DNA of 64,000 nt from Haliotis rubra (GCF_003918875.1 NW_025766956.1:310001-374000), one strand, 5' to 3'; positions 1 through 22,900 are shown, numbered from the stretch's first letter. The notes: generated by a model from the letters alone, not told the origin. Program-made: numbers and translations.

Positions 1-494
1 TAATTTGTAATATTTTAATGAAACAATTTTGAATATGAAGATCTTTTTCTCATACTCACACACACACGTTTTTATATGAGCCAACACTTCCAAGAAAAGA
101 CTGTTCAAATCATACAGCTTACTTCTACCACTGTATTAGCATTTTCCATTTCTTACTGAACATACTGAGAATTAGATCTTTTTAACATGTTACTCACTAC
201 TAATATCATGGGTGTTGGTTGTGGTGGCAAGCAAGTGAATTGGGGCTTAAGCTAGTTTACCATTATGGTGGGGGACACTAAGAATGAAGTTCACACTTCC
301 TACCAATGAAGGGAATCAAATGTTGGCCTGCAGTCTGATAAGCCAACTCTTAAAACACTTGCCTACTCTACCACCCAGGTTCAGAAATAAATGGAGAATG
401 TGCATTACAAAGGTGAGAGACATGCTCCAATTATACAGATTCATCTAATGGTAACTGCAACTATGAGGTGGGTATATCAAATCAACACAAGTAC

Positions 495-524
495 CTCATC
501 TTTTTTCTCTGCAACTTCTTCTCC
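495..524 (-). CDS. SH3BGR: SH3BGR tail microexon GEEVAEKKDE (duplicate)
   Basis: TAG|30 nt|GTACTT; identical to 2149-2178. Confidence 0.78.
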
Positions 525-3500
525 CTAACAACATATTAATTGATCTCAGTCGTTGGAGGGTTAAATCATTTAATGTTACTCAAAGCATACTGAAGGTGAT
601 CATATTGAAAACTCTAACTGCCCTGACTAAATGGTAACTTAAATACATGTACTTATAGCACATTTGACCAAAATAATGCATAATTGTTAACTTTCATGTG
701 GTCAAATTCAATTGTTACAGCCAATCTGACATGGCAATATTAAATATCTGAAGAATATCTGACATTGACAGCAAGGTAGACAGATCTGATATGCAGAATC
801 TTTGTAAATTCAAATGACTGTCAATGATTTGATGGACCTAAACAAGTTCTTTTCACTGATTTGTAATCTCAACAAAGAAGAAAAATACCTTTTCCTCTTT
901 TTCTTCATTTTCTTCCTCCTAACAAAATAATATGAGAATTTGTCTGCACATTGTTACAAGATGTCATTCAACATTCCAGTACTGTACTAGATTTAAGCAA
1001 CAGCTCATTCATTTTCAAAACACGGTATCATATATAAGTGTGTATACATAGTTTGTTCTTCCATACCAAAATGTTATTAAAATTATTTGACATGTTGAAA
1101 CTGTTATTACAATGAAATATAATGCACTGTTTACTCATTCATATAATTGTAATATTTTCATCAAGCATTTTTGAATATGAAGATATCTCACACACGCACA
1201 CACACTTTTGGATATGCCCCAACATCTTCAAGAACATACAACTACGGCATATTACCGTAGATAAGCCGACTCCCAAACTTGACCCTTAAAATCAGTGTCA
1301 AAATGGTATGTTTTGTACATAAGCCGATCCCCCGCGATGGGGTCCTATTTTACTGATGACTGCGTCAGAATTCATACTTTTATATTATTGTGCATGTTTG
1401 AACTTGATCGCCGGAAACGTGCGCACAGCTGATTGCTATTTCCAGCTCAAATACACATGGTAATCTTAATCCCTGCAAATAATACAATGCCCAGCAAAAA
1501 CAACTTAGAACTTAAAAGGTAAATAATCTTGTCTAGTGATGTTTAATTGCAAATTTGACGTCTTTACTGACAAAGTCGTCTTCTGTTGTTTGTTCACGCG
1601 AAGTGATACAATGTTGTTTTCTTACCCCCGGAAAAAAGTTTGACGAAAGCATAACCTATAGATAAGCCGACCCCCTTCTAAAGACTGCTTTTTTGGGGCC
1701 TCAAAATTCAGCTTATCTACGGCAATATACAGTTATCAGCGTCATCTTTCACAACTGTCCAAATCATACAGCTTACTTCTACCACTGTATAAGCATTTTC
1801 CATTTCTTACTGAACATACTGAGAATCAGATCTTCTTGTTAACATATTACTAGCTACCAATATCATGGGTGTTGGTTGTGGTGGCAAGCAAGTGAATTGG
1901 GGCTTAAGCTAGTTTACCATTATGGTGGGGGGACACTAAGAATGAAGTTCACACTTCCTACCAATGAAGGGAATCAAATGTTGGCCTGCAGTCTGATAAG
2001 CCAACTCTTTATAAACACTTGCCTACTCTACCACCCAGGTTCAGAAATAAATGGAGAATGTGCATTACAAAGGTGAGAGACATGCTCCAATTATACAGAT
2101 TCGTCTAATTGCAACTATGAGGTGGGTATATCAAACCAACACAAGTACCTCATCTTTTTTCTCTGCAACTTCTTCTCCCTAACAACATATTAATTGATCT
2201 CAGTCAATGGAGGGTTAAATCATTTAATGTTACTCAAAGCATACTGAAGGTGATCATATTGAAAACTCTAACTGCCCTGACTAAATGGTAACTTAAATAC
2301 ATGTACTTATAGCACATTTGACCAAAATAATGCATAATTGTTAACTTTCATGTGGTCAAATTCAATTGTTACAGCCAATCTGACATGGCAATATTAAATA
2401 TCTGAAGAATATCTGACATTGACAGCAAGGTAGACAGATCTGATATGCAGAATCTTTGTAAATTCAAATGACTGTCAATGATTTGATGGACCTAAACAAG
2501 TTCTTTTCACTGATTTGTAATCTCAACAAAGGAGAAAAATACCTTTTCCTTTTCCTCTTTTTCTTCATTTTCTTCCTCCTAACAAAATAATATGAGAATT
2601 TGTCTGCACATTGTTACAAGATGTCATTTAACATTCCAGTACTCTACCAGATTTAACCTACCTCACACACAGATTAATGCAAGAAATTAGTATAATCCAA
2701 ATGTCCTTTTTATCTACAATGTCAATCCTATTTGCCTGTTTAGTACCTCACTCAGCAAGATTCCAGCCATATAGATAATCTGTGGATAGGAGAATCTGAA
2801 CCAGACTTTCCAAGGTCAGTTTTGTGACCAGCGATCCACATCATTGTGATACAAGGATATGCTATCAACCATGTAATGAGTCTGAGCACCCAATACATTT
2901 GTCAATTGGTCGCTGGCACCTATTCTAACCCGAAATCACCATGTGGCGTGTCCATTCCAATCACCTTGAAACATCTGGAATTATCAATTTGGTCAAAAGT
3001 CATCTACACTATCATTAAATGAGAGTTTATACTTTCACTGTTTTGTAAGGGCAACATGCACAGGGCTTGGATCTAGAGATACCTTCTCCGCCTTTTCTTC
3101 CTCAGCTTCCTCCTAACAAAACAACCATAAACAAGATCACAAAAATGGTTATTTGTTATGACTAAAAAAAAAATTAAATAATGTCAGAGTTACACTGGGT
3201 GTTTAGGTCTATGTTATAATTGTAAAATGATACAAAAATCCTTCCTTGCCTTTCACTGTGCATAGATTGCACTTGTTTCATAAATGATGTATTTATGATC
3301 ACTGTGTCACTGGATAACGAAATTGTATTTCAAGTTAACATATTTCTTGAAGTTACGAGCTTGTTACATATTCTTTCCAATTTTCTAGTCTAGTCGAGTT
3401 TATAAGCGATTTGGGAGAGCTAGATAACAATTTAAAGAAGAGAGATGCAACACTCAGTAAACACAGTAACAATTACATGTATCTTACACAGGGTGAAGTA

Positions 3501-5378
3501 GAGAATATGCCACCTACATATTTGTACATGATCACTGCATCCAATTATGTCATCTGTATGAAACAGTGTTCGAAATAGCCACTGGCCAGCTAGTCTGTGG
3601 CTAGTAAAAATCTAGTCGCACCAGTAAATCTTCACAGTTACTGGCCTGACGGGCTAGTGAATTTTCATGTGGTCATATTGTAAATATATCACACTCTCTG
3701 ACTTGTTAAGTTATAACACACTTTTACATCATGCAACATTATGGCCTGATTAAAATGTTCATCATATTATCAGCTTATTGATGAAACCCGTGTCTACATT
3801 CAAATTTTGGGCTAGTGAATTGTTTTGTGGGCTAATGACTTTCAGACATAGCCGGCCCGACTGGCTAGTAAGATTTGGAAACTATTTCGCACACTGGTAT
3901 GAAATACATGAGCACATAAGGAGGAGTTCTTTGAGGTGTGTTACTTCTTTCCTGATATAAACCTACATTTAGAAACATGATACTCGTTGGAAGGAAACCA
4001 AGCAGCATGTTTTCCTATTTTATAATGGACATTAGATATTAATATATCACAAATCCCATTTGAACACACCATATTTCTATCTATCTTGATGACATATCAC
4101 ATATGAACATGAACAACGACATTACAACCAGAGTGAAAGTAAGTGTAATGACAGTTACACTTAAATATTGGACGTGGTACTGACACACAGGAATGGGCAG
4201 CTTGCAAAAATCAGAACAAATACCTTATCCTTTTTCTCTTCCTCGTCGTCTCCCTAGCAACATAATCAATACTTAAGAGTAACGTGATATTATGGAAAAT
4301 TTACATGTGACTAATCAACATGTGCATCTTAAATAGAAAGAAAATATTATGAAGCTTACAGCATGTCATAAAAGTTTCTCAAAATACATTTAGTACACCA
4401 TATATGAAAATGGTTTAGTGAAATATCTAATTCTAACCATATAAAATGACTGTATGAAAATATTATACTATTACAAAGGTCAAACAGACTTCACATATAT
4501 ATGTTTCACCTCAATATGCATCTTTGATGCAGAAACATGATCAACAGGTCAAATATAATGAGGAAGTCACACAATAAGAAGACTAATGGAAATTTTGGGG
4601 ATTTGGGGATTTCTGAAAAATATATACCGGGGTAGTTATTTTAAAAAATTCACATCAGCTGGGGACTGTTGGGATTTGACTATTGGTATCTGCAATTACC
4701 CTTGCAAACCATGCACAATGTTTAACATGCTCAAAATTGAAATATTGGGATTTATCAGCTGAATTACTTGTACATGTATTATCATGAGTTCATGTCATTG
4801 AGACTTAGGGCATGCTTGCAGCATGTGGCATCTAATTCTATCTGCTAAGAAGGAAATCAAAACCACTGCAACAAAAATACCTCTTTCTTTTCCTTTTCTT
4901 CTTCTTCTCCCTAATAACAAAGTTTTTCAAGACAATCAAATATCAATTATATCTATAAACTGAATTATTTTATAGAAAAAACACTTCATTAAAAACAGAA
5001 GGTTTTGTATAGTATCTGCACATATCTTCCAAACCACACATAGCCAAATACTGGTAGCCCATATAGACTTTCATCAATTTAATTCATTTATTATGTATAG
5101 GTGGCTGTATCAGATAATACTTTATAGAAAAAGATATATATCAAGGTCAGTTTACAAATATCCAAGTATGGCTAAATTTGTTGAGCTGTTGCAAGACGAA
5201 CGTGCTGGAGTTATACTTAATTTGTCAAAGTTTGTGTATACTTAAGGAGAAAGCAACAGTTGAATTTGTTTGAATCTTTATGTATCTTATGGGTCTGCCA
5301 CCATGAGGGGATGGGAGTAGGCAGGGTGAGAAATGTTATGCACATGTGCACGTTAAATTATTATTGAATGTAAAATAA

Positions 5379-5425
<47 letters not shown>

Positions 5426-8400
5426 ATAATGGGTTGGGGGTTGGTAATGTGGTTGTCAGGATGTTTGATGTCCCATCCCAGGCATCAGTTTCAAAGAGAT
5501 ATTTAAATAAAATGAATTTATAAGAAAACTCTAACAAATAATAAAAGTCAATAGAAATCTATATTTGGTATTATTTATCAAGTTACAATGGCAAACTATG
5601 GATGAACTAACTGCAAGATGAAATCAATTACTAATTTATGGCTTTTCAATGTTACTTTTAATATTTTCTATATTTTAATTAATCTATTTTAAAATGAATA
5701 ATTACCGTGCACAAAGGCACAGCCAATAATGCTGCATGGACATTATCATATAAAAACTCTAATAACAGTCCATGTAATCGTAAAATTTCCTAAAGTCTCT
5801 CTTGGCCAAACCATTACAACTTACGGTCAGTCTGTTACGTCTTCAACTGATTTGGAACGAGATCATCAAATAGGTGACATCATTCTACTTTCGGAAATAT
5901 GTATAGCAGAGACCGAACGTAAAAGCGATTAAACACCAAGTAAGACGTGACATTAAATTACACGGATGTAGACCACCAAATACCATGTGCAGGAACATGC
6001 CTGCATAAGTATTTTCGAATATTCCTTTATATTTTAGTAGACTTAACAGTCTCTGAATCAACAACACATTTTCTGATGATGTAAACACCTGTACATTGTG
6101 GGACAATTCGAGACGATCACTGGAGCGAACTATAATTCCCATCAAAAGTTTAGACTCACTGAAAACACTCACTATACGTTATGTATATATATATGGTTAC
6201 ATCGAAGATTGATTTCTCCACTAACTTGGGGCAACCAAATGCAAACCTTATGCAGATGAATTTCACAAGGATCAGGCATCAAATTGCTGAAAAGCATGTG
6301 CAAATATCATGCATGTGAACAGCGGCATTTTGTTGTAAAGTTTTGTTAAGAATTCGCCAATTTTCACTGAGTTTATCATTTCTTGAACTCATGACATTAA
6401 TCTTTTAAACTGTACGAATTTGTTTTACAATACATCAGTTCATGTGTAAACAGTACCTTTAAAACAATATGGAATATTTTGCAAACTTTAGTTTAGAACA
6501 GTTGCCTGAAGTAAGCTGCTATATTTACACTACTGAGTCTAAACTTTTGATGGGGAGTATATAACTGTTAAATATTACGATGATAAATATAAATGACCTT
6601 TTAACTGCAATATACATAGTTTTTACACAAAAGACTTGACGTAATGATATATAATCATGTCTTGAACATTTATAATACATGAAAACGATCTCTGGAATGT
6701 GAGCGCGAGAAAACAAAGCTCTCGATCATTTACGACCAAAGCTGACTATTACAGTGGCTAAAAAGACATTAGTATACAATGTTTCCATACACAATTCCGT
6801 ATACAGCAGGCACATTGTTTGTTTATGCCTGATAACACACGTAAATAATGGCACCAGGTTAGAGGGAGTTTTGTAATTTGTATATTGAATATCTTATGTA
6901 TGAACACAGCAATAAAGAATATCAACATGTCAGATGATACAAGGTTAACAAATTTCTGATAAGTAGGGTTTTCAATAAAGTACCGGTAGGCAGGTACATA
7001 TTAATCTCTTATTATTGCAAGGGCAGATCAACAGTACATGGTATTCATCCTGAACAGAATCATTGCAATAACTACAAGTTATTATTACTAATTATGGGCT
7101 TTTAGATTGTCTATATGCTATGATATTAAAATCATGTACCCGGTAAATTGCACCTGAATTTAGTCATTGTTCTATTTAACGGTCATGAGGATATACACCA
7201 GTACCTTTCAGGTGTAATTTGTGATTTAGTTTCTGTTTATATTTGTAGACTTATCTCTGTCATCAATGATCATCAAGAATGTTATGGCCAAGGTATGTAT
7301 GTAGGTATGCAGAAAACACACTGTTCATCACAACTATGCCTTGTCAATGTACAGGTATGGTCTATCATCAAGAACTATAACAAACTGATAACATACACCA
7401 CACGGTGACACGCAAGGACATTCCATTTAAAAGTTTTAGGAATGACATGCACTTAAGTATAAGGGACACAAGGGCTATCAAAAGGTTTACACTGAAAAAC
7501 GATACTTTCAATTTACAGAAACTTGACGTTTCAGAACAATAACATAAACAAAACATGTTTCATAGTTTGATCTTACTTCAGTAGGAAAATACTGATCTAA
7601 GACGAACTGGAGAGATCAATCTCATTGAATGACTCAACTAGTAAACCCCAATTAGGATCTTATTCAATAATTTACCATTCAAAAAGAATATATTTACAGC
7701 ATTTATGCATGTAAGACTTGCGTTAAAGGTAGTTGTAATCGTTGGACTTATCATGCTGATAAACTTTCTTCATGTTACATGACATAATCATCTGACTTTG
7801 TTCAAACTTCAAGGTATATCCAAGAAACACTAACAGAGGACTGTAACCTCTCTGCATGCAATGAAGGCACTGTGTATGTCCTGATAGAAAAAAAGTGGGT
7901 CACTCTCACACACAAAACAAATACCTCTTCCGTTTTTCCTTCTACTTCTTTTTCCTAAACATAACAATAACAGACTCAACTTAAACATCAAATTAATAAA
8001 TTTTCACAATGATTTACAGACAGAAAGTATAACAGTGACAAAATTCTCTTTAATACTTTTTGAAATATCGTCAAATTTAATGTAAAGCTGTTTGAGAGTT
8101 ACCATATCACAAGACAATTGTATATAGAAATTACCAGTCTAACCATCTGATCATACTGACTTGACATACCTTAGGCTTTCTCATTCATTCACATATTTCT
8201 GTTCACATTCATGTCTTAACATAACGGCAGTTTGTGACAGGAACCTGTCAAATGTCTTGAAAATAGGAACCTGTCAGAAGCCCGAGTTGTAAGCTTAGTT
8301 ACTTATCATTCAAATGTCTTGAAAATATGGTCGAGCCAAGTTCTGGCAAGTAGACTGAAAGGTTTTGAGAATAGACTGCATTTCTCAAAGTTTAAGGCTG

Positions 8401-11400
8401 CTGAGCTGCACATGATAGTCATAGAAAACAAAAAATATTTGAACATATATCAGCTAATACAATCTAACTGAACATAATTAGTCAACTCAGGTCAGTTATG
8501 CAGGAAGGGGACCACAACAACAACAACAACAACAATACCTCATCCTTCTTCTCCACCTCCTCCTCGTCCTGGTAACACAAGCATCAACACCATCATACTT
8601 TTGCATGTTATGCTATCATTTTTAATGCTGCACTCAGCAATATTTCAGCTATATGACTGATGTCTGTAAATAACTGAGTCTGGACCCGACATCATCAGCT
8701 ATGCAGAAGGGATCTTCTAACATGTATCAAACTAGTTAGCAAGTCTCGATCCCATGACAAGCATGAGTTGATGAAGTCCAACACTACTTTGTGGCTGCAA
8801 AAGCAGGAGACTTTGATGGTGGGAGAATGCGGTAGAAAGTCAGTAATATTCCAGCTATGTCAGAGTGGCCTAAAGGCTCTGATGACAACCAATCAGTCAT
8901 TACCCACTGAAGTGACTCTGTGAGTCAGTTGAGTTTATTGCTCCCTTGAACAGTATTTCAGTTATATCACAGGATGTTATTTGATGTGGGGGAAAGTTCG
9001 AATTAGTGCATCACTTTGGTAAACCCATGAGTTGTTGAAACCATCAGCACAAATTGCAAATTTGAACACATGATCACAAGTTCCTCCACAGTGAATAGAA
9101 GATCCTAAAGGACTGGGCTTACTGTTTAGCCATCTTTATTTACGTAAAAGTATAAGGTATCCTTTTTGCAGCTACTACTGCTGTAAATCACTGAAACCAC
9201 TGCTCCATCAATATGTTAAAAAAAGGGTCTGACTAATGCTTAGTCTCTGAAAATAGAAAATTTTAATAAAAACAACCAACTCCATTTATAATGAAAAGAT
9301 CCAAGGGGACAAGCAACCTCAGGAAAAATCTAAGACTTCATTTTGTGCTATAGCATTAGAGTAATGACTGAGCACAACTGAAAATATTTTGCTTGAGGGA
9401 CTGTATGACAGACTATAATACCTCATGCATTTGGAGAACGCAGTGAAATCATTCAGATGTCAGATATGTCATCTCCCAGCATGCCTTGCTGACAGTGAAA
9501 ATGTGAGTGAGTTTCCAAGTTATCATGTCTCGACATAGCAGTACCATATACAAAATATATTAATACAGTCTTATAATGAAGTTCGTATTTATTTGACACA
9601 ATTAGTCACTTTTCGTTCCTGGAAATGAACAACATGTATAGTTATTGTTTGAGAAAACTGTATTATAGATGAAGGAATTCTTCAACAATATCAAACAATG
9701 GTCTGGGAGATAAAGTGATCTCACAAACCTTTACAATGACAAACAAAGTGAAGACAACCTACAAAATACAGTGTCATCATTAACATGATTAAGTCTGATA
9801 TAAGTGATTGTGTGTGAAAACAAAAAACATTGCATCAACAGACATCACAAGGTACATTGATGCATGTGACATTAAATCTGTTAACAGCTGTGAATATCTA
9901 TAAATGACCTTTCAATAGAAAAGTAAATACCTCTATCTGTGCTTGAGATACTTCAATTTTGTCAGCCATCTTCAGAAATGCATATATATTGTTTGTCTCC
10001 ACAGCCTCATAAAATTGATCATAGCCCTGCAAAAAAAGGAAAGCACTGAAACATTTTTCATACATGTACATGTAGAAGCAGTATGTACATGTTATTGTTA
10101 ACCTTCCATTGTTCTGTGTTCCTATTCACAACATACTTGTCAAAAGTTAGGTAGGAGAGAATATTAGTTATTCTAAGATGCCTAGCGGTTAGAACAATCG
10201 AAAAAAAAATACATTATCAGACAATAAAGGTATAGTTTTTTGATGACGTAACAATTGAATGACGTTGTCCCGTCACTGCGCCATTCTAGTCTGCCCCCTC
10301 GTAATCGAATTATTTTACATTACGTCACAATGTAAGTGACGTCACGATGCATGTCAGTTGTCATCGCCTCGTACGGCCTCCTACAGTAAACTACTCCGTT
10401 GCATCCCGTTCCTTGGTTTGCATTTGCTTCACGCAGCTAACATCACTGGTGGAAACATTACGTTTATGTTTTACGACGGGTTAAAATGTGTCAATTCGAC
10501 TCACAAGTTTTCAGCGACACGGTAGCGTTAGCAATGTTTACATACCCACAATGCAATCGTGGAATGTCGCTTTGACTACTCAGAATATTAGAACCCTAAT
10601 GCTTAGTCTAATCTTTGGTAAGGTAGGATTGAATATTAACCCTAATTATCAATAAAATAGTTTTAAAAGAGTAAAACAATACTTTATCAAGTTTATTAAC
10701 ATGTTATTGATAAACCTTCCATTTTCATAATTATAACCTAAATAAGATGGAATAATCAGAATATAGTAGTACTTAATCATGTATATATTAATATGTTACT
10801 AATAAACATTTTTTCTACAATTTTCATAATTTCTTATAGAGCACTTAAAACAGTTGAGTTTACAATAGAAATGTCTCTTGGCCTTACAGTGTATTGTTAT
10901 TTCATTTGTCTTGTCATGTAAATGAAAGGGAGATCCCTTTTAATATATCTGCCATCCATATCCGTGACAAGGCTGGTAGAAAGAATTTGATACTGTCCAT
11001 TAAGTTGAACACCTAGTCTTACAACTGGATTCCTAAATGATTCCCTTGTATACTCATACAACTGACCCACTAAAGCAGAATTCAGATCAGATCAGTCTCT
11101 AGGATATTTATCCAATATGTCCAGGAGATATTTCTGAAATGTGGTTATGAAACAGAAGAATGTGCCATGAAATGTCTTAAAAAGATATGAAAATGTCTTT
11201 TATATTCCATTTCTATCCCAAAACATCACCAGGGAAGCCAGTAGCACAGTGTACCCCTTTTCTTATAACTAGTCAACAGGACTAGTGGAAACCACGTTTC
11301 CCCATTCCTCAGAGTTTGTAGGTAATCCTTATTGAATGAAACAAATATCATGTTTACTATGTTCACATTTTCTACAATATGTTCTACTTCCAAGTTGACA

Positions 11401-14400
11401 CAAATTTGAGAATGGCTCAAGAATTATAGTCTGTACACAGAGGTAAATCCAAGTAGTAAATGAGGACAACAATCACTGGAGTATTTCTTGGCCCCCAGCA
11501 TAATTTAGTGGTTTTAGGCCATAGGACTCATATGAAAGTTCAAAGTGAACTCCATTAATTTTTAAAGTCTTAATGACTTACACCACAGTACTGATCATCA
11601 CTGAATATCTGTGGAGGCAAAGGGTGCTTCATTCCTTCCCTTGGTTCTGCATTTGCTCTCATAAACTTCCTGTCTTCTTCTCGGTTGGGGTCAGAGATGT
11701 CAACTGTCTCCATGGGTATGCTCATACTGGACAGAATGTCTGTCACATGCAGCATCTCTTTCTTAAGCTGAAAAAAGCAACAATGGCAACATTTAACACC
11801 TGTAACTCTTACAAGCATATAACACTGAAAAACACAGAGCAAAGAACATTTATGATGATGTATTTCAAGGCAATGAGTCCCCATGCTAAAGGTGACTATC
11901 AGGGACATAGAAATGAATGCATGTGTAAAATGTTGTGAGTCTGCCTGGCTAAACGTACTGAACTCATCTGTTGGTAACATTTTCTAACAGCTCTGAATGT
12001 TACCATATTAGTATGAAACATGCCACTTGTCTGAATCCCAAGTCTGGAAACTTTCTGTTTGGTCCAGTGAGCAAAGTTAACAGCATTGAATTTTCCATAT
12101 TTATAACATAAAAATCTACTGACCAGTTGTGGCTCTGGGCTGTAATATACTTATTCAAAGTCTAGTCGACATGTGTACACTCTCACAATACCCAGCATGC
12201 ATTTTCCACTACTACTATTAATTGACCCTGTACTCCAATTGTCATCCTATATCCAGCATGTATGTATTCTTTATAATTGCACTATGTTGTATTATGGGCC
12301 AAGGGCCTACATTACTGAAATAAAATGTCTGTCTGTCTGTCAAAGTCTAGTAATATTTCAATAGTATGTCCAAAAAGCTCAATTAATAATCGTGATTAAT
12401 GTTGATATAAATACACCATCTTCTACTGAAAATGGTGGTCACAGCTCAGAACCATGTTTTCTCTGTAGACTTCAACATGGACTGTTATCATGATTATGAG
12501 CTATTTTTTGACAATATTAGCAAGAATTAAAAAAATTCAATCAAATGAGGCTTCAGACAAGTGGCTAAAGTCACTAACTGGAAATATTTTATATTAAATA
12601 TCTGGCCAAGCATCATCATAATTAGGGTTAGACATGGCCAAATGTCCATTTGTCAGAGGTAACAATCTGGAATGAATAGTTGTTATCTCCCCAAATCCAG
12701 TTATTTTCCATAACAGCTAGTCCTGAATGATTTGCAGACTAGCTGAATATGAGAAATGGTTTCTAACTTACTACCCCTGATCAATGCTCAGAATTTGAGT
12801 ATATCTAATGGTTCACATACATGTCATAACAAGGACCCCTTGACTTTCATTTGAACACAGTTAAACAACAACATGCCCTTCAATCCCTAGCCAGTGGTCT
12901 GCATGTGGTGTAACAAATTTCCAATTTATCACATTTGTGAGCTGCTTTCACTTCTTTAATACCTCTTTTAATAGTAACCATGCAAATTATAGAAGGTGCA
13001 TTAAATACAGAACCAGCAAAATAACCTTTAAACATATGTTCTTTTTTCTGTATAAAATGAAGCTTCATGTGTAGAGTTTGTACCTTGCAATGATCACTTG
13101 TGACATACGATGCAGGATAGTGGTACCAGGAAGGAGCAACATGTTCATCTGACTTTTGAGTGAGTAAATTAATGTTGCTTCATACCTAAGCCTACATCTT
13201 ATACAAATATTAATAATAACCATAAAATGTAAAATATATCAGTGCATCCACGGGGACTCAGAAAAAGTGTAAATACTTTTTGTAAAAATTCCAATCAAGT
13301 GACAATACGTTATCACTGAGTTTGCTACTAGCTGGGTTATGGTATTATTTGCAATTTAATTACTGTAACAATGTGATGATCATGATACACAATAAAATAA
13401 CAGAATTAATAATAATATTTAGGTGTCTGGGACCCCCATTTTGTTGTCCAGGACCCCTGGAAATTAAGAGTATGAGTCCCAGGGACCCTCAAATTCAGGA
13501 CTCCGTGTAAAACGATGAATCAGTTAGCTATTCATTAATCCTGAATTAATGCCCCTACAGAAGTCAACTACTAGAACTGTTGCCAGCTTCGATAAGCCTT
13601 TAAAATTCAGCCTCATAACAGAAAACTCCATGTGTTGGGCATTTTGATGTGGCACATTACTTCTGATTACTAAAATGTCCAAGACCAACTCAGGCACATA
13701 TTGCTGTTAATCCTTGATTCATTGAGTGATTTACCCTTCATTTTGTTATGAATCACCATCGAGAGTTAGAGCACCAAGTATTAGCTTGAAGTTTGGTAGG
13801 CTTTTATGAGACACCTTGTTGATTCAAGCTGGTGTGGACACAAGATTTACACTGTTTACTATGTCCTGACTGAAAACATTCCTTGAAATGTTTTGGGAAG
13901 GTGTCACTTTCTAAAACAGGTTGTCATATTTTTTAATGTGCTGCTTTTAATTCACATTTCAAATTCGGTTTACCTCAATAAATGTAACACAAATCAAGAA
14001 ATAGCTCTGTAAGCAAAAGTAGACATGAATTAAGGGCTATTTCAAAATTGTTTCCTTACATAGACAGCAACATACACTTGCACTGTTTACCATGTTACCA
14101 ACGTCATAAAGATATCACTGACACCAATCATTATTCGTTCATTTAGATTTGTGACACCGTGATTATTGATGAGTGCAAACACAAGATCTAACTTTCAAGC
14201 AGAAGTCAAACTAAAGGTGAAAGTTTTGGTTATGGTCAAACAGTCACATAATGTAAGAAACTCAATAAACAACGCTCAAAGTTTAGGTTCAACGACTCAG
14301 CAGTTTCCAAACTTTTGTAAACAAACATTGTCTGGTGTCATTTTGACATAGCGAAATAAACGAGTGGGTGTGGCTAGTTTTGTTGACATATTTACCTGCG

Positions 14401-14440
14401 TACTGCTGCAAATGTTCGTGAGGTAAACCTTGATCACCAT
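495..14440 (-). CDS. SH3BGR: SH3 domain-binding glutamic acid-rich protein (thioredoxin-like fold plus E/K-rich tail); multi-exon, 3' end lies beyond position 1
   Basis: Core exons 14440-14396 (MVIKVYLTNICSSTQ), 11767-11582 (LKKEML...PLPPQIFSDDQYCG) and 10026-9931 (GYDQFYEAVETNNIYAFLKM...), all GT-AG and phase 0. They match the SH3BGR family motifs MVIxVY, PLPPQIF and D.F.EA.E.N..Y.FL. Microexons follow at 8568-8539, 7954-7925, 4910-4881, 4253-4224, 3112-3083, 2578-2543, 2178-2149, 918-889 and 524-495. Confidence 0.92.
889..918 (-). CDS. SH3BGR: SH3BGR tail microexon EEENEEKEEK
   Basis: TAG|30 nt|GTATTT, phase 0. Confidence 0.78.
1245..1732. mobile_element. Tc1/mariner/pogo-type MITE
   Basis: 22-bp imperfect TIRs (CGGCATATTACCGTAGATAAGC / GCTTATCTACGGCAATATACAG, 19/22), preceded by TA, internal ATAAGCCGA repeats; absent from the paralogous copy of the duplication. 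Confidence 0.8.
2149..2178 (-). CDS. SH3BGR: SH3BGR tail microexon GEEVAEKKDE
   Basis: TAG|30 nt|GTACTT, phase 0. Confidence 0.78.
2543..2578 (-). CDS. SH3BGR: SH3BGR tail microexon EEENEEKEEKEK (36 nt)
   Basis: TAG|36 nt|GTATTT; paralogue of 889-918 with an in-frame 6-nt difference. Confidence 0.78.
3083..3112 (-). CDS. SH3BGR: SH3BGR tail microexon EEAEEEKAEK
   Basis: TAG|30 nt|GTATCT, phase 0. Confidence 0.8.
3564..3896. mobile_element. hAT-type MITE
   Basis: TIRs CAGTGTTCGAAATAG / CTATTTCGCACACTG (14/15); perfect 8-bp TSD GTATGAAA at 3556-3563 and 3897-3904; related end fragment at ~50765-50865. Confidence 0.9.
4224..4253 (-). CDS. SH3BGR: SH3BGR tail microexon GDDEEEKKDK
   Basis: TAG|30 nt|GTATTT, phase 0. 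Confidence 0.8.
4881..4910 (-). CDS. SH3BGR: SH3BGR tail microexon GEEEEKEKKE
   Basis: TAG|30 nt|GTATTT, phase 0. Confidence 0.8.
5381..5425. repeat. (CAT)15 microsatellite
   Basis: Perfect trinucleotide run. Confidence 0.97.
7925..7954 (-). CDS. SH3BGR: SH3BGR tail microexon EKEVEGKTEE
   Basis: TAG|30 nt|GTATTT, phase 0. Confidence 0.8.
8539..8568 (-). CDS. SH3BGR: SH3BGR tail microexon DEEEVEKKDE
   Basis: CAG|30 nt|GTATTG, phase 0. Confidence 0.8.
9931..10026 (-). CDS. SH3BGR: SH3BGR exon 3
   Basis: TTTTTTTGCAG acceptor, 96 nt, GYDQFYEAVETNNIYAFLKMADKIEVSQAQIE, donor GTATTT. Confidence 0.92.
11582..11767 (-). CDS. SH3BGR: SH3BGR exon 2
   Basis: TTTTTTCAG acceptor, 186 nt, PLPPQIF motif, donor GTAAGT. 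Confidence 0.95.
14396..14440 (-). CDS. SH3BGR: SH3BGR exon 1 (start codon)
   Basis: ATG at 14440, 15 codons, donor GTAAAT. Confidence 0.9.
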
Positions 14441-19930: not shown

Positions 19931-22900
19931 ATGTCGAAGGACGACTACGATGATTACAGCGATGACTTCATCAGTGATGATGAGGACTTTAAGAGCAAGT
20001 CCAGGAACCAAGGGAAACAAGGTGGTAAGTAGCTTCACATCATGAGCATGTGTGGTCCTTGACTTTCACCTGAATAGGTACTGGCTTTAGTATGTAAGAC
20101 CACTCCTGTGTTACAGTGTGAGAAGATTAATAGTAATTGAATACAAGGGATAGGTGCATGACTGGTTACATGGAGATGAGCAAGGTAATGCTCCCTATGG
20201 GTAGGGGAGTTAGAGGTTTTTGATGCACTAACATACTGAAAATTATGTACGACCCTTCCCTAATGCTCGTCATAAACTTTCACTCACATGACCTCGCATT
20301 CTTTTGTGATTTAAGACTGGTAAATGTTGCACTTGGCTTTAGATGACACTTACCTGGTACTTGTCTTAAATCACAAGCTGAAAGACCTAGAACATGAACA
20401 GAGTAGCAATAAATCCATTCCAGCATGACTGGACACATGTTTGAAATCGGAACACTTTTATGCGTAAGGGCACAGAGGTGTGATAGGGCGTTATTTTCTA
20501 GGAATTAGAGTTTAATTGTCAAACCTAAGAACGGATTGTGCAATGAATAAAACAAGTTTGCAGTATTTCAGTAACTTTATTTTGGATACTGAAATGTTTT
20601 TTCTTTCTTATAAATGGAAACAGTGATGTTAGTTACATAGACTACAAACTCGAAACCATTTTTATACCATTAAATGCAATCGAAAAACCACCCCACCCCT
20701 ACAGCATATTACTGATTGACTCGCCCATGACCTAAGGTATCTGTTGACTGTCAACCCGAGTAACTGAACTTGCTAACTTCTACTTACGGAAGGAATTATT
20801 GATCACCACACTGCTGTTTCCAGTTTGGCATTGAGTAGACAAGATCGTTTTAATCTGGGACACATTTTCTGTAGATGGGTTGGGGGTTTACATGTAAAGA
20901 TTTGTCACTTACTGCCTCGAAACCTTTGAAGGGTATTGTGTATTTTGATAGCCCACAAAAATATTAATAATAGTGCTGTAACGATGCATCGAACTGTCGA
21001 TGGAATGCAATTGTTGAGTCTCCGATAGCAATTAATCGATGGTAGAAATGAAAAACTATCGATGCATTGATAATATGTGTGACTATCGATAGTTTAGTAA
21101 TTGACTAACGTTGATAAATGTGCAGTGCAAAATATAGGAAGTACCAAATTCGTTCCCTTTGATTTAGAGTTACCCGGCCCTGTTACCTCTTAAACAAACA
21201 TGACTGTTTACTCGATCTGGGTTTCAAGTTTCTTGTCAGTTATTGTTTGCAATAGTATGTTGCAATAGACAATCACTATCGCAATAGTTGTTTCCCCCTC
21301 AAAAGTCACCCCTAATTATTAATGTAATGTTTTTATTCAATGTTTTTTATACAAAAAATATTTAATTTGAAACATAATTTTTGTCATATTTTTGTAATTT
21401 GTTTAGAGTAGCAACCATGTGCAGTACAGCTGTTGTCTAGTCTAGAACCAGGCATTAACTTAGTGACATTGAATTTTGTTTTTTTATGCCAATATTTGTA
21501 AATGTATTATCTTAGTGGTCATTGAACCATTCTGAATTTACATCAAATTCGTCTCCAAACACCTTGTAGAAAATACTGAGATGAAAATCACTGATGTCCG
21601 ATCCTGACGACAACTAAGGGTCAGCAAGTGTTATGTATTCATATGCAGGTGCAGTAGACCATGTAATTTGCAGTCCTTTGATTTAGATTTAAGATTGATT
21701 GTGGTCAATAACCAACCAATCGAGTATCCCTCAAAATCATGCTAGAAAAAGGGTTAAGGTTACCAATAATTGCACAGTGGCTCCTAGAGTTTGTCAAAAC
21801 TGAATAACACACAGAAATAACATGTCATATTCCTGTATTCTTGATGCTTTCAATTTTTTTCATGACTCAAAAAAACATTCATTGCATCTTTAGAACAATG
21901 TATTTACATAGGTGCATTTTTTGGGCAATATTAATGTTGGGTTTCCAGTTTTTTTATGATTATGCTCCTAATGGTTTATCAACAGGTTAATTCTCGGAAC
22001 TGAAAGAATCTTTCATATTGAATGAATTGCTAGTCTCTAGGCTTCTTTCATTCACAAGAGATGGATAACTTGTAAGTCCTCATCCCTTGAAGTTGACTTT
22101 TCTATAAGTCAGGCATCATTACTGTTAGAAGGAGAGCTGAGGCCCCTGTTTGCCAGCTGTGTGTACCTCCTGCAGCCTGGGCCAGAACTGTACACCCCAG
22201 GTGCAGTCATTATCAGACTAGAGTGAATGGGTTGTCATGATCACTATCAGTTAACGGTTCTATAAATGTTTCAAGTAGCATTCCAGTGATTAATGAAAGC
22301 TTGAAAATCTACAGTACCAGGGGAATGAAAGTCTTGCCTTTAAGATTACACAATTTTGATTGAAGTTTGCTAATGAGTAATGATGCTGAAGGTCATCTAT
22401 TTACCTGTGATAACTGTACTCATTAACTGAAGTCTGTGCCGCCATACAGGGTTCAAGATGTCAGGATCTGGCTCAGCCAGTCACTCTTCTCTAAAACTAT
22501 CGGATTTAAGGAGAGACTCTGATACATTCTGGACGTCTGGTCGTGGCTTGACTCATGACCTGATCCCCATGCAGGTCATCTCGACCCCTGCACCAGAAAC
22601 CCCCATACCGTCTGACCATGACAGTCAGGCCAGTTCACTGGATGATCATCCCAAATCCAAAGCTCTGGTTCCATCAGTTCGTCAAAGTTCTTCAAGAGCT
22701 CAGTCTGCTTGTCATTCCACACATCTGCAGAGTGCTCATACTCGTAGAGTAAGTTTGTCACGGCGTGACCCATACCCGCACCCCAGCATCCCACCTGATG
22801 GCTGAGCTGACTGAGGAGACTGTGTCTGGGGGGGAGAGGGAGACACATGCTGTCTCCAAGGCAGTGAAGAAAGCACCTGCCCCTGCCAGAACAGGATGGA

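What the first reader, a model, noticed from the sequence alone, without database searches (positions are those of the whole stretch)
495..8568. Hidden array of nine 30-nt phase-0 microexons builds a modular E/K-rich tail on SH3BGR
Seen: nine purine-rich blocks on the minus strand, none visible in the ORF track. Eight are exactly 30 nt and one is 36 nt. Each is bounded by YAG and a GTAY donor with no +5 G, and each is stop-free in phase 0: DEEEVEKKDE, EKEVEGKTEE, GEEEEKEKKE, GDDEEEKKDK, EEAEEEKAEK, EEENEEKEEKEK, GEEVAEKKDE, EEENEEKEEK, GEEVAEKKDE. SH3BGR exon 3 ends at a donor with no stop, so downstream exons are required. Known: vertebrate SH3BGR has a Glu-rich tail that SH3BGRL paralogues lack. 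Inference: because every exon is symmetric, any subset can be skipped in frame, giving a charged tail whose length is tunable in 10-aa steps, possibly tissue-regulated. The array continues past position 1.
Basis: partly seen in the sequence, partly recalled or inferred. Interest (0 to 1): 0.85.

Follow-up and report, generated by a model that had tools for sequence, protein, structure and literature searches.

The report
Microexon array in abalone SH3BGR gene
A muscle-type SH3BGR gene, almost certainly from blacklip abalone, carries at least 17 tandemly duplicated 27-42-base mini-exons coding Glu/Lys-rich peptides between its folded domain and a large charged last exon. Their DNA signature is convincing, but their use in mRNA is still unproven.

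Summary
All nine blocks are at the stated coordinates on the minus strand, with YAG acceptors and GTAY donors. Eight are 30 nt and one is 36 nt. About 0.003 such blocks are expected by chance.

- **Gene context.** The blocks lie downstream of three phase-0 SH3BGR exons (45, 186 and 96 nt).
- **Extent.** The array continues past position 1 with eight more intact blocks and two decayed ones. That exon is 38% Glu and holds ten FRRPFDDSDEEE repeats.
- **Selection.** Among old copies only the block plus about 10 nt of each splice site is conserved (0.67-0.71 identity). The rest of the introns is random (about 0.3). This points to selection on exons.
- **RNA.** The evidence is thin. Spliced contigs use the exon-3 donor exactly. 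One contig carries 135 letters beyond exon 3, which is what a direct join to the terminal exon predicts, so an isoform that skips the whole array probably exists. A second contig stops at the exon-3 donor, which hints at a branch.
- **Blind spot.** The reads tool could not lay 30-nt exons, so inclusion is untested.

Best reading (0.6): these are real, alternatively included cassette microexons forming a variable linker. It is a new variant of a known kind, with moderate interest.

The parts
14396..14440 (-). SH3BGR exon 1 (45 nt, ATG, phase 0-0), peptide MVIKVYLTNICSSTQ
   Evidence: The same 45-nt first exon is found in the barnacle homologue.
11582..11767 (-). SH3BGR exon 2 (186 nt, phase 0-0), carries the PLPPQIF motif
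   Evidence: PF04908 match of 53-54 bits against a cut-off of 21. The same 186-nt exon is found in pearl oyster and barnacle.
9931..10026 (-). SH3BGR exon 3 (96 nt, phase 0-0). Ends open at donor GAG|GTATTT.
   Evidence: Spliced contigs in runs X1 and X2 cover exactly 9931-10026 with no mismatches and do not run into the intron.
8539..8568 (-). Microexon m1, 30 nt, DEEEVEKKDE, CAG/GTATTG
   Evidence: The reads tool masked this place.
7925..7954 (-). Microexon m2, 30 nt, EKEVEGKTEE, TAG/GTATTT
   Evidence: No contig was laid here, which is not informative.
4881..4910 (-). Microexon m3, 30 nt, GEEEEKEKKE, TAG/GTATTT
   Evidence: The reads tool masked this place.
4224..4253 (-). Microexon m4, 30 nt, GDDEEEKKDK, TAG/GTATTT
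3083..3112 (-). Microexon m5, 30 nt, EEAEEEKAEK, TAG/GTATCT
2543..2578 (-). Microexon m6, 36 nt, EEENEEKEEKEK. Equals m8 plus an in-frame GAAAAG.
2149..2178 (-). Microexon m7, 30 nt, GEEVAEKKDE, TAG/GTACTT
889..918 (-). Microexon m8, 30 nt, EEENEEKEEK (recent copy of m6)
495..524 (-). Microexon m9, 30 nt, GEEVAEKKDE (identical to m7)
100..996 (-). Younger copy of the two-exon tandem duplication unit (holds m8 and m9)
   Evidence: 98.1% identical (874 of 891 aligned bases) to 1754-2656, with five small indels. The only difference inside an exon is an in-frame 6-nt indel.
1754..2656 (-). Sister copy of the duplication unit (holds m6 and m7)
1250..1737 (.). Interspersed repeat in the m7-m8 intron. 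Not part of the exon array.
   Evidence: More than 80 copies in the genome, mostly at 92-93% identity. The exon-bearing parts of 400-2700 are unique in the genome.

Best explanation
The nine blocks are part of a lineage-specific array of at least 17 phase-0 cassette microexons of 27-42 nt, most of them 30 nt. The array arose by repeated tandem exon duplication inside the 15.6-kb interval between SH3BGR exon 3 and a 1.65-kb Glu/Lys-rich terminal exon.

Each block is almost pure GAR purine sequence, which is the classic exonic-splicing-enhancer composition. It is framed by a conserved T-rich TAG acceptor and a weak GTAYTT donor. Recognition would therefore rely on exon definition through enhancer-binding factors. 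That step is inferred from general knowledge.

All exons of the gene are phase 0-0, so any subset can be included without breaking the frame. Each included block adds 9-14 proline-free Glu/Lys/Asp-rich residues. These would lie between the thioredoxin-fold SH3BGR domain and the terminal region with its ten FRRPFDDSDEEE repeats. The result is a charged linker of variable length, from 0 to about 180 residues.

What is shown and what is inferred:
- **Shown:** the anatomy, the phases, the selection signature and the use of the exon-3 donor.
- **Inferred from a contig length:** an isoform that skips the whole array.
- **Not shown:** inclusion of any block in mRNA, and any regulation.
For: - **Not chance:** 9 blocks observed against 0.003 expected, and none on the plus strand.
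- **Lengths:** without any frame filter, the purine-rich YAG...GT blocks in the e3-to-terminal-exon interval number about 20. Seventeen of them have lengths that are multiples of 3.
- **Stop triplets:** in the intact blocks, 13 lie in frames 1 and 2 and 0 in frame 0. The blocks were partly chosen for being open, so this is biased.
- **Selection signature:** old paralogous blocks keep 0.67 identity in the exon and 0.70-0.71 in the 10 nt on either side. Identity further out is 0.27-0.32, which is random. Composition is 93% purine against 50% in the region.
- **Gene structure:** e1, e2 and e3 are all phase 0-0. The 45- and 186-nt exons are shared with barnacle, and the 186-nt exon also with pearl oyster.
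- **Donor type works:** the e3 donor GAG|GTATTT is of the same type as the microexon donors, and spliced contigs of two runs use it.
- **Terminal exon is expressed:** likely RNA runs hold 25-40% of the sampled words of the terminal exon plus 3' region.
- **Branch hint:** one contig (X1) ends at the e3 donor, as expected at a branch in the assembly graph.
- **Not a repeat family:** the exon-bearing units occur nowhere else in the genome.
- **Related tails:** bivalve and barnacle SH3BGR homologues also carry long acidic tails with lineage-specific repeats.
Against: - No read or contig was seen on any microexon. The tool masked m1 and m3, and it probably cannot seed on 30-nt pieces, so this is a blind spot rather than a negative result.
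- The X2 contig has exactly 135 letters beyond e3. That is the length at which a 31-mer assembly would stop if e3 were joined directly to the terminal exon. The best-assembled isoform in that sample therefore probably skips all the blocks.
- The X1 contig stops one base short of a shared G. This does not fit a simple branch between m1 and the terminal exon.
- The donors are weak, with no +4A or +5G.
- Pearl oyster and barnacle encode their tails in large exons, with at most one candidate microexon. There is therefore no cross-phylum support.
- No protein from this species was available for comparison.
Confidence: 0.6

Rival explanations
1. The blocks are relic or unused pseudo-exons. They arose by exon duplication, but the mature mRNA always joins exon 3 directly to the terminal exon.
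For: - The X2 contig carries exactly the 135 letters beyond e3 that a direct e3-to-terminal-exon join predicts.
- No contig lies on m2 or m4.
- The donors are weak.
- Two neighbouring blocks are clearly decayed: 32 and 25 nt, each with an in-frame stop.
Against: - Introns between old copies are randomised, yet 17 blocks keep their length in multiples of 3, about 93% purine content and both splice sites. Neutral decay should have erased these features, as it did in the two decayed copies.
- The absence of laid contigs is explained by masking and by the 30-nt size.
Confidence: 0.22
2. The blocks are constitutive exons. One invariant mRNA includes all of them, and the tail length is fixed.
For: The splice signals are uniform and conserved, and every block is in frame.
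Against: - The 135-letter coincidence indicates an isoform without them.
- A full-inclusion chain would have carried that contig about 178 letters beyond e3.
- The X1 contig breaks at the e3 donor.
Confidence: 0.1
3. The blocks are non-coding intronic splicing elements. They would act as decoy exons or recursive-splicing stepping stones that help remove a 15.6-kb intron, and would never remain in the mRNA.
For: - The composition is pure enhancer-like purine, with paired splice sites spaced 0.3-3 kb apart along a long intron.
- This reading is compatible with the all-skipping contig.
Against: - Such elements need no reading frame, yet the lengths are multiples of 3 and frame 0 is open in 17 of about 20 blocks.
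- The encoded peptides match the Glu/Lys composition of the terminal exon.
Confidence: 0.05
4. The blocks are chance purine-rich low-complexity sequence, or part of a dispersed repeat family.
For: None beyond the low complexity of the sequence.
Against: - 0.003 blocks are expected by chance.
- The length is exact and the splice sites are conserved.
- The units are unique in the genome apart from one inserted repeat.
Confidence: 0.01

Closest known systems
Vertebrate SH3BGR (muscle-specific, with a Glu-rich C-terminal extension) compared with SH3BGRL, SH3BGRL2 and SH3BGRL3
   Same: - Thioredoxin-fold SH3BGR domain above the Pfam cut-off.
- PLPPQIF motif.
- No CXXC motif.
- Long Glu-rich C-terminal part (PMC12827327).
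   Different: - Here the acidic part is far longer, about 550 residues in the terminal exon.
- It carries ten FRRPFDDSDEEE repeats.
- It is preceded by an array of at least 17 candidate microexons.
- Orthology to vertebrate SH3BGR rather than to the ancestor of the whole family was not tested.
Alternatively spliced acidic microexons of vertebrate troponin T (fast TnT exons 4-8, the fetal exon, and the avian Glu-rich segment)
   Same: Clusters of very short in-frame exons encode acidic residues in a thin-filament-associated muscle protein. Combinatorial inclusion tunes charge and length (PMC8559874).
   Different: - A different gene, with the array at the C-terminal side of the folded domain.
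- Many more units, of uniform size.
- Alternative use is not demonstrated here.
Schistosome micro-exon genes (MEGs)
   Same: Ten to twenty very short exons, mostly multiples of 3, are separated by long introns. Automatic annotation misses them, and variation comes from exon skipping (PMC10526429).
   Different: - MEGs are secreted, parasite-specific proteins built almost entirely of microexons.
- Here the array is inserted into a conserved intracellular gene, between normal exons.
- The two are not homologous.
Tandem exon duplication arrays of symmetric exons encoding disordered repeats (titin PEVK, collagen)
   Same: Phase-symmetric exons multiply by tandem duplication and encode low-complexity charged segments (PMC3632108 on phase symmetry and disorder; PMC9013439 on tandem exon duplication).
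   Different: - The units here are 30 nt, much shorter than the 54-84-nt units recalled for those arrays.
- A 98%-identical two-exon duplication shows the process is ongoing.
ER/K single alpha-helix spacers
   Same: The Glu/Lys-only runs of the terminal exon are predicted as long lone helices, at residues 232-265 and 288-332 with pLDDT up to 76. The microexon peptides have the same proline-free composition.
   Different: - Four of the nine units start with Gly.
- The microexon-encoded chain itself was not folded, because the joined step was left out.
- This resemblance is a lead only.

Membership tests
SH3BGR family (Pfam PF04908) | Match to the family profile above the curated cut-off | tested here: met
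   Exon 2 alone scores 53-54 bits against a cut-off of 21. Exon 3 matches profile positions 80-99.
SH3BGR family (Pfam PF04908) | PLPPQIF motif (SH3-binding / EVH1-binding) and no catalytic CXXC | tested here: met
   Exon 2 reads ...HPLPPQIFSDDQYCG. No CXXC is present in e1-e3. The motif definition is from PMC12827327.
SH3BGR proper (as opposed to SH3BGRL types) | Glu-rich C-terminal extension on the same polypeptide | tested here: inconclusive
   The terminal exon is 38% Glu and 23% Lys, on the same strand and in the same phase. Linkage to e3 rests on the 135-letter contig-length match, not on a read sequence.
SH3BGR family gene structure | Conserved phase-0 exons of 45 and 186 nt | tested here: met
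   Barnacle has 45, 186 and 126 nt. Pearl oyster has 186 and 93 nt. This gene has 45, 186 and 96 nt.
Cassette microexon array (TnT-like, combinatorial) | Exons present in some mature transcripts and absent from others | tested here: inconclusive
   The reads tool masked m1 and m3 and laid nothing on m2 or m4. There are indirect signs of an all-skipping isoform and of a branch at the e3 donor.
Cassette microexon array (TnT-like, combinatorial) | All units symmetric (same phase at both ends) with canonical splice sites | tested here: met
   17 intact units of 27-42 nt are all multiples of 3, with YAG acceptors and GT donors.
Schistosome micro-exon genes (MEG) | Secreted product with a signal peptide, and a coding region made almost wholly of microexons | tested here: not met
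   The N-terminus is the SH3BGR fold itself. More than 70% of the coding sequence lies in normal exons. No signal-peptide predictor was run.
ER/K single alpha-helix | Stable isolated helix formed by alternating Glu and Lys/Arg runs | not tested
   Only the terminal exon was folded. The joined microexon peptide was not submitted.

The most novel reading that the evidence does not exclude
The array works as a combinatorial charge ruler. Tissue- or stage-specific splicing picks any subset of about 17 ten-residue Glu/Lys modules. This sets, in steps of about 10 residues, the distance and charge between an actin-pointed-end-binding SH3BGR domain and a multivalent FRRPFDDSDEEE repeat region. The array is still expanding by tandem duplication in abalone.
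Probability: 0.22. Interest if true: 0.7.

Novelty: new variant of a known kind. Interest (0 to 1): 0.45.

Why it matters
If the blocks are spliced in, this is one of the largest uniform microexon arrays outside the schistosome micro-exon genes. It would sit in a conserved cytoskeletal or muscle gene, with a 98%-identical two-exon duplication showing exon birth still in progress.

It would make a clean natural system for three questions:
- how 30-nt exons made purely of enhancer sequence are recognised;
- how linker length in an SH3BGR protein affects function;
- how much coding sequence standard pipelines miss. Exons of 30 nt are invisible to 31-mer indexes, ORF tracks and most spliced aligners.

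If the blocks are never included, the locus is still a useful example of exon-like elements kept by selection inside an intron.

Tried and rejected
- **Protein search with the terminal exon**: no hit. Low complexity swamps the word index.
- **Protein search with the open frame around exon 2**, scored on the exon only: no hit. Proteins of this genome or near relatives seem to be withheld.
- **Representative-library search with exon 2**: best identity was 62%. No protein from the same genus was found, so no annotated model could be compared with the blocks.
- **Locus look-ups for the homologues:** the Dreissena, Sinanodonta and one barnacle protein were not on record.
- **Read laying**. I chose 4150-10100 so as to include exon 3 as an anchor. 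The microexons were either masked as internal repeats or too short to be laid. This gives no verdict on inclusion and is not evidence against it.
- **Pfam on the terminal exon and its alternative-frame tail:** nothing.
- **ESM Atlas feature search:** nothing usable.
- **Findings search by words:** nothing.
- **Exact spliced mapper on the barnacle locus:** my mapper produced spurious 1-8-nt exons for the last 20 residues. Only the first four exons are trusted.
- **Joined spliced model not searched.** The step of looking up the e1-e3 (+ tail) product in transcript assemblies was therefore left out.
- **Chance and dispersed-repeat explanations:** considered and rejected.
Full report
**What is there**

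A mechanical scan for YAG + purine-rich open block + GT recovers all nine and nothing else in the window. Eight blocks are 30 nt and one (m6) is 36 nt. The acceptors are one CAG and eight TAG, each behind a T-rich run. The donors are GTATTG, GTATTT, GTATCT or GTACTT, never with G at +5. Markov shuffles of the region give 0.003 such blocks on average, and the plus strand of the whole window has none.

**Gene context**

The window is G000:C2066:310001-374000. PF04908 (SH3BGR) matches window 11579-11776 on the minus strand at 54 bits. Reading the strand gives three exons:
- e1, 14440-14396 (45 nt, starts with ATG);
- e2, 11767-11582 (186 nt, holds the PLPPQIF motif);
- e3, 10026-9931 (96 nt).

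All three are phase 0-0. e3 ends open at GAG|GTATTT, the same donor type as the blocks.

The 45- and 186-nt exons recur in a barnacle homologue. The 186-nt exon also recurs in a pearl-oyster homologue, followed there by a 93-nt exon. The domain part of the gene model is therefore old and sound.

The genome totals are 1,378,282,171 bases in 2,855 contigs. The published Haliotis rubra assembly has 1,378,265,264 bp in 2,854 scaffolds (PMC6774278). The difference is one record of 16,907 bases, about the size of a mitochondrial genome. The organism is therefore almost certainly blacklip abalone, from a Nanopore-based assembly.

**Beyond the window**

I fetched the 10 kb below position 1 (L005 = C2066:300001-310000). 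The array continues there with eight more intact blocks:

| Block | L005 coordinates | Length (nt) |
|---|---|---|
| n1 | 9459-9433 | 27 |
| n2 | 7992-7954 | 39 |
| n3 | 6758-6729 | 30 |
| n4 | 6240-6211 | 30 |
| n5 | 5949-5923 | 27 (weak GTTGTT donor) |
| n6 | 5531-5502 | 30 |
| n7 | 5052-5020 | 33 |
| n8 | 4695-4654 | 42 |

There are also two decayed copies, 32 and 25 nt long, each with an in-frame stop (L005 9005-8974 and 8610-8586).

The array ends at a large exon running from L005 4324 to the stop at about 2670. That exon is 38% Glu and 23% Lys. It holds ten copies of a [KR][KR]FRRPFDDSDEEE motif about 36 residues apart.

The microexons would form a linker of up to about 180 residues between the domain and this region.

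**Are the blocks under selection?**

Among the non-recent copies, mean pairwise identity is:
- 0.67 in the block;
- 0.70-0.71 in the 10 nt on either side;
- 0.27-0.32 at 11-60 nt away, which is the random level.

The blocks are 93% purine, in a region that is 50% purine. With no frame filter, about 20 purine-rich YAG...GT blocks lie in the e3-to-terminal-exon interval. Seventeen of them have lengths that are multiples of three. Off-frame stop triplets number 13 and frame-0 stops number 0 in the intact set. That count is biased, because openness was part of the selection.

The two decayed copies show what neutral drift does here. Together these points argue that exon-plus-splice-site units have been kept while the introns randomised.

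The array is also still growing. Window 100-996 and 1754-2656 are 98.1% identical. Each carries two blocks, and the only difference inside an exon is an in-frame 6-nt indel.

An interspersed repeat with more than 80 genomic copies sits at about 1250-1737 in one intron. The exon-bearing DNA itself is unique in the genome.

**RNA evidence**

Fifteen runs hold part of the terminal exon and 3' region. Four small ones, probably transcriptomes, were laid on window 4150-10100.

- **Exon 3 is spliced.** It is covered exactly (9931-10026, no mismatches) by a 457-nt contig in X1 and a 626-nt contig in X2. Neither contig continues into the flanking intron. The contigs are therefore spliced RNA, and the GAG|GTATTT donor works.
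- **The blocks could not be assessed.** The tool masked 8503-8576 (m1) and 4878-4920 (m3) as internal repeats and laid nothing on m2 or m4. The shortest pieces it laid elsewhere were about 35 nt, and the underlying index uses 31-letter words. A 30-nt exon probably cannot be placed. This is a blind spot, not a negative result.
- **A probable all-skipping isoform.** The X2 contig has 135 letters beyond exon 3 that fit nothing in the stretch.
  - If exon 3 were joined directly to the terminal exon, a 31-mer assembly would stop when it reached the first 31-mer shared between FRRPFDD repeats. That 31-mer is at offset 105, which gives 135 letters. The match is exact.
  - A full-inclusion chain would have run about 178 letters.
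  - An isoform that skips the whole array therefore probably exists and dominates in that sample.
- **A hint of a branch.** The X1 contig, from another sample of the same study, ends at the exon-3 donor. That is what an assembly does at a branch, and it hints at more than one downstream partner. It stops one base before the G shared by all the candidates, so I do not lean on it.

**Relatives**

No protein from this genus was returned. Bivalve homologues (Pinctada imbricata, Dreissena polymorpha, Sinanodonta woodiana) and barnacle homologues have the same domain followed by acidic tails with their own repeated motifs. In Pinctada and the barnacle the tail lies in exons of 168-522 nt. Pinctada has one unannotated 48-nt candidate microexon. 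The array is thus specific to this lineage.

**How it most likely works**

The blocks are nearly pure GAR. From general knowledge, purine-rich exon sequence acts as a splicing enhancer and can compensate for small exon size and weak donors. The conserved TAG acceptors and GTAYTT donors fit regulated cassette exons. Every exon of the gene is phase 0-0, so any subset is in frame.

A single-sequence AlphaFold model of the terminal exon has low confidence overall (mean pLDDT 50). It predicts long lone helices only for the proline-free Glu/Lys runs and coil for the proline-bearing repeat units. The microexon peptides are proline-free Glu/Lys/Asp, though four of the nine start with Gly. A stiff or polyampholyte spacer is plausible but untested.

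SH3BGRL proteins cap actin pointed ends through the thioredoxin fold, and the muscle protein SH3BGR differs from them by its Glu-rich extension (PMC12827327). A variable spacer between such a domain and a multivalent motif region is therefore a reasonable functional guess.

**Comparison with known systems**

The closest known systems are:
- the combinatorially spliced acidic microexons of troponin T (PMC8559874);
- the schistosome micro-exon genes (PMC10526429);
- tandem arrays of phase-symmetric exons that encode disordered repeats (PMC3632108, PMC9013439).

The gene is a member of the SH3BGR family. It is not a MEG.

**Limits**

The two earlier notes on this window, a Penelope insertion and a hammerhead ribozyme, do not bear on this finding.

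**Verdict**

My probabilities are:

| Reading | Probability |
|---|---|
| Real, alternatively included microexons | 0.6 |
| Unused relics | 0.22 |
| Constitutive exons | 0.1 |
| Non-coding splicing elements | 0.05 |

It is a new variant of a known kind, with interest 0.45.

Noticed in passing
L005 2670-4324 (= C2066:302670-304324), minus strand: A 1.65-kb terminal exon, 38% Glu and 23% Lys. It holds ten copies of a [KR][KR]FRRPFDDSDEEE motif about 36 residues apart (SDEE resembles a CK2 site). It ends in an Arg-rich tail, RRRRRRQ...MLGLED. Pfam and the Atlas give no match.
   Followed up: partly
L005 2921-2926 (A-run): An apparent 1-nt frameshift inside the terminal exon. The sensible frame continues in another frame after an A6 run. 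This is probably a homopolymer error of a Nanopore-based assembly, but it could be real.
   Followed up: no
L005 9005-8974 and 8610-8586, minus strand: Two microexon-like blocks of 32 and 25 nt. Each keeps its AG/GT flanks and has a stop in frame 0 just before the donor. They are either decayed copies or possible poison or terminating exons.
   Followed up: no
window 1250-1737: An interspersed repeat of about 390-490 bp with more than 80 copies in the genome, mostly at 92-93% identity. It is inserted in the m7-m8 intron and absent from the homologous place below m9, so it arrived after the duplication or in only one unit.
   Followed up: partly
window 6131-6567 and 8621-8655: Hundreds of contigs from all four runs pile up here at 90-95% identity, with summed depth in the thousands. 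These are abundant, probably transcribed repeat families lying in the introns.
   Followed up: no
window 8503-8535 and 5380-5425: A (GTT)n run directly after the m1 donor on the minus strand, and a perfect (TCA)15 microsatellite in the m2-m3 intron.
   Followed up: no
L002 = G000:C713:993791-996973: A second, more divergent SH3BGR-family exon (36 bits). It reads LAPQIC where the window's gene has PLPPQIF, and looks SH3BGRL3-like. No tail was examined.
   Followed up: partly
L007 13610-13657 (Pinctada imbricata locus): An unannotated 48-nt TAG...GTACCA block, EEEEETAIDEEEKKDE. It lies between the exon-3 homologue and the annotated tail exon of the pearl-oyster SH3BGR gene and is a candidate missed microexon.
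   Followed up: no
whole genome G000: The base and record totals equal the published Haliotis rubra assembly plus one record of 16,907 bases (PMC6774278). The organism is almost certainly blacklip abalone.
   Followed up: partly
window about 19931-20000, plus strand: An ATG followed by an acidic open frame (MSKDDYDDYSDDF...) points away from the SH3BGR gene. It may be the start of a neighbouring gene.
   Followed up: no
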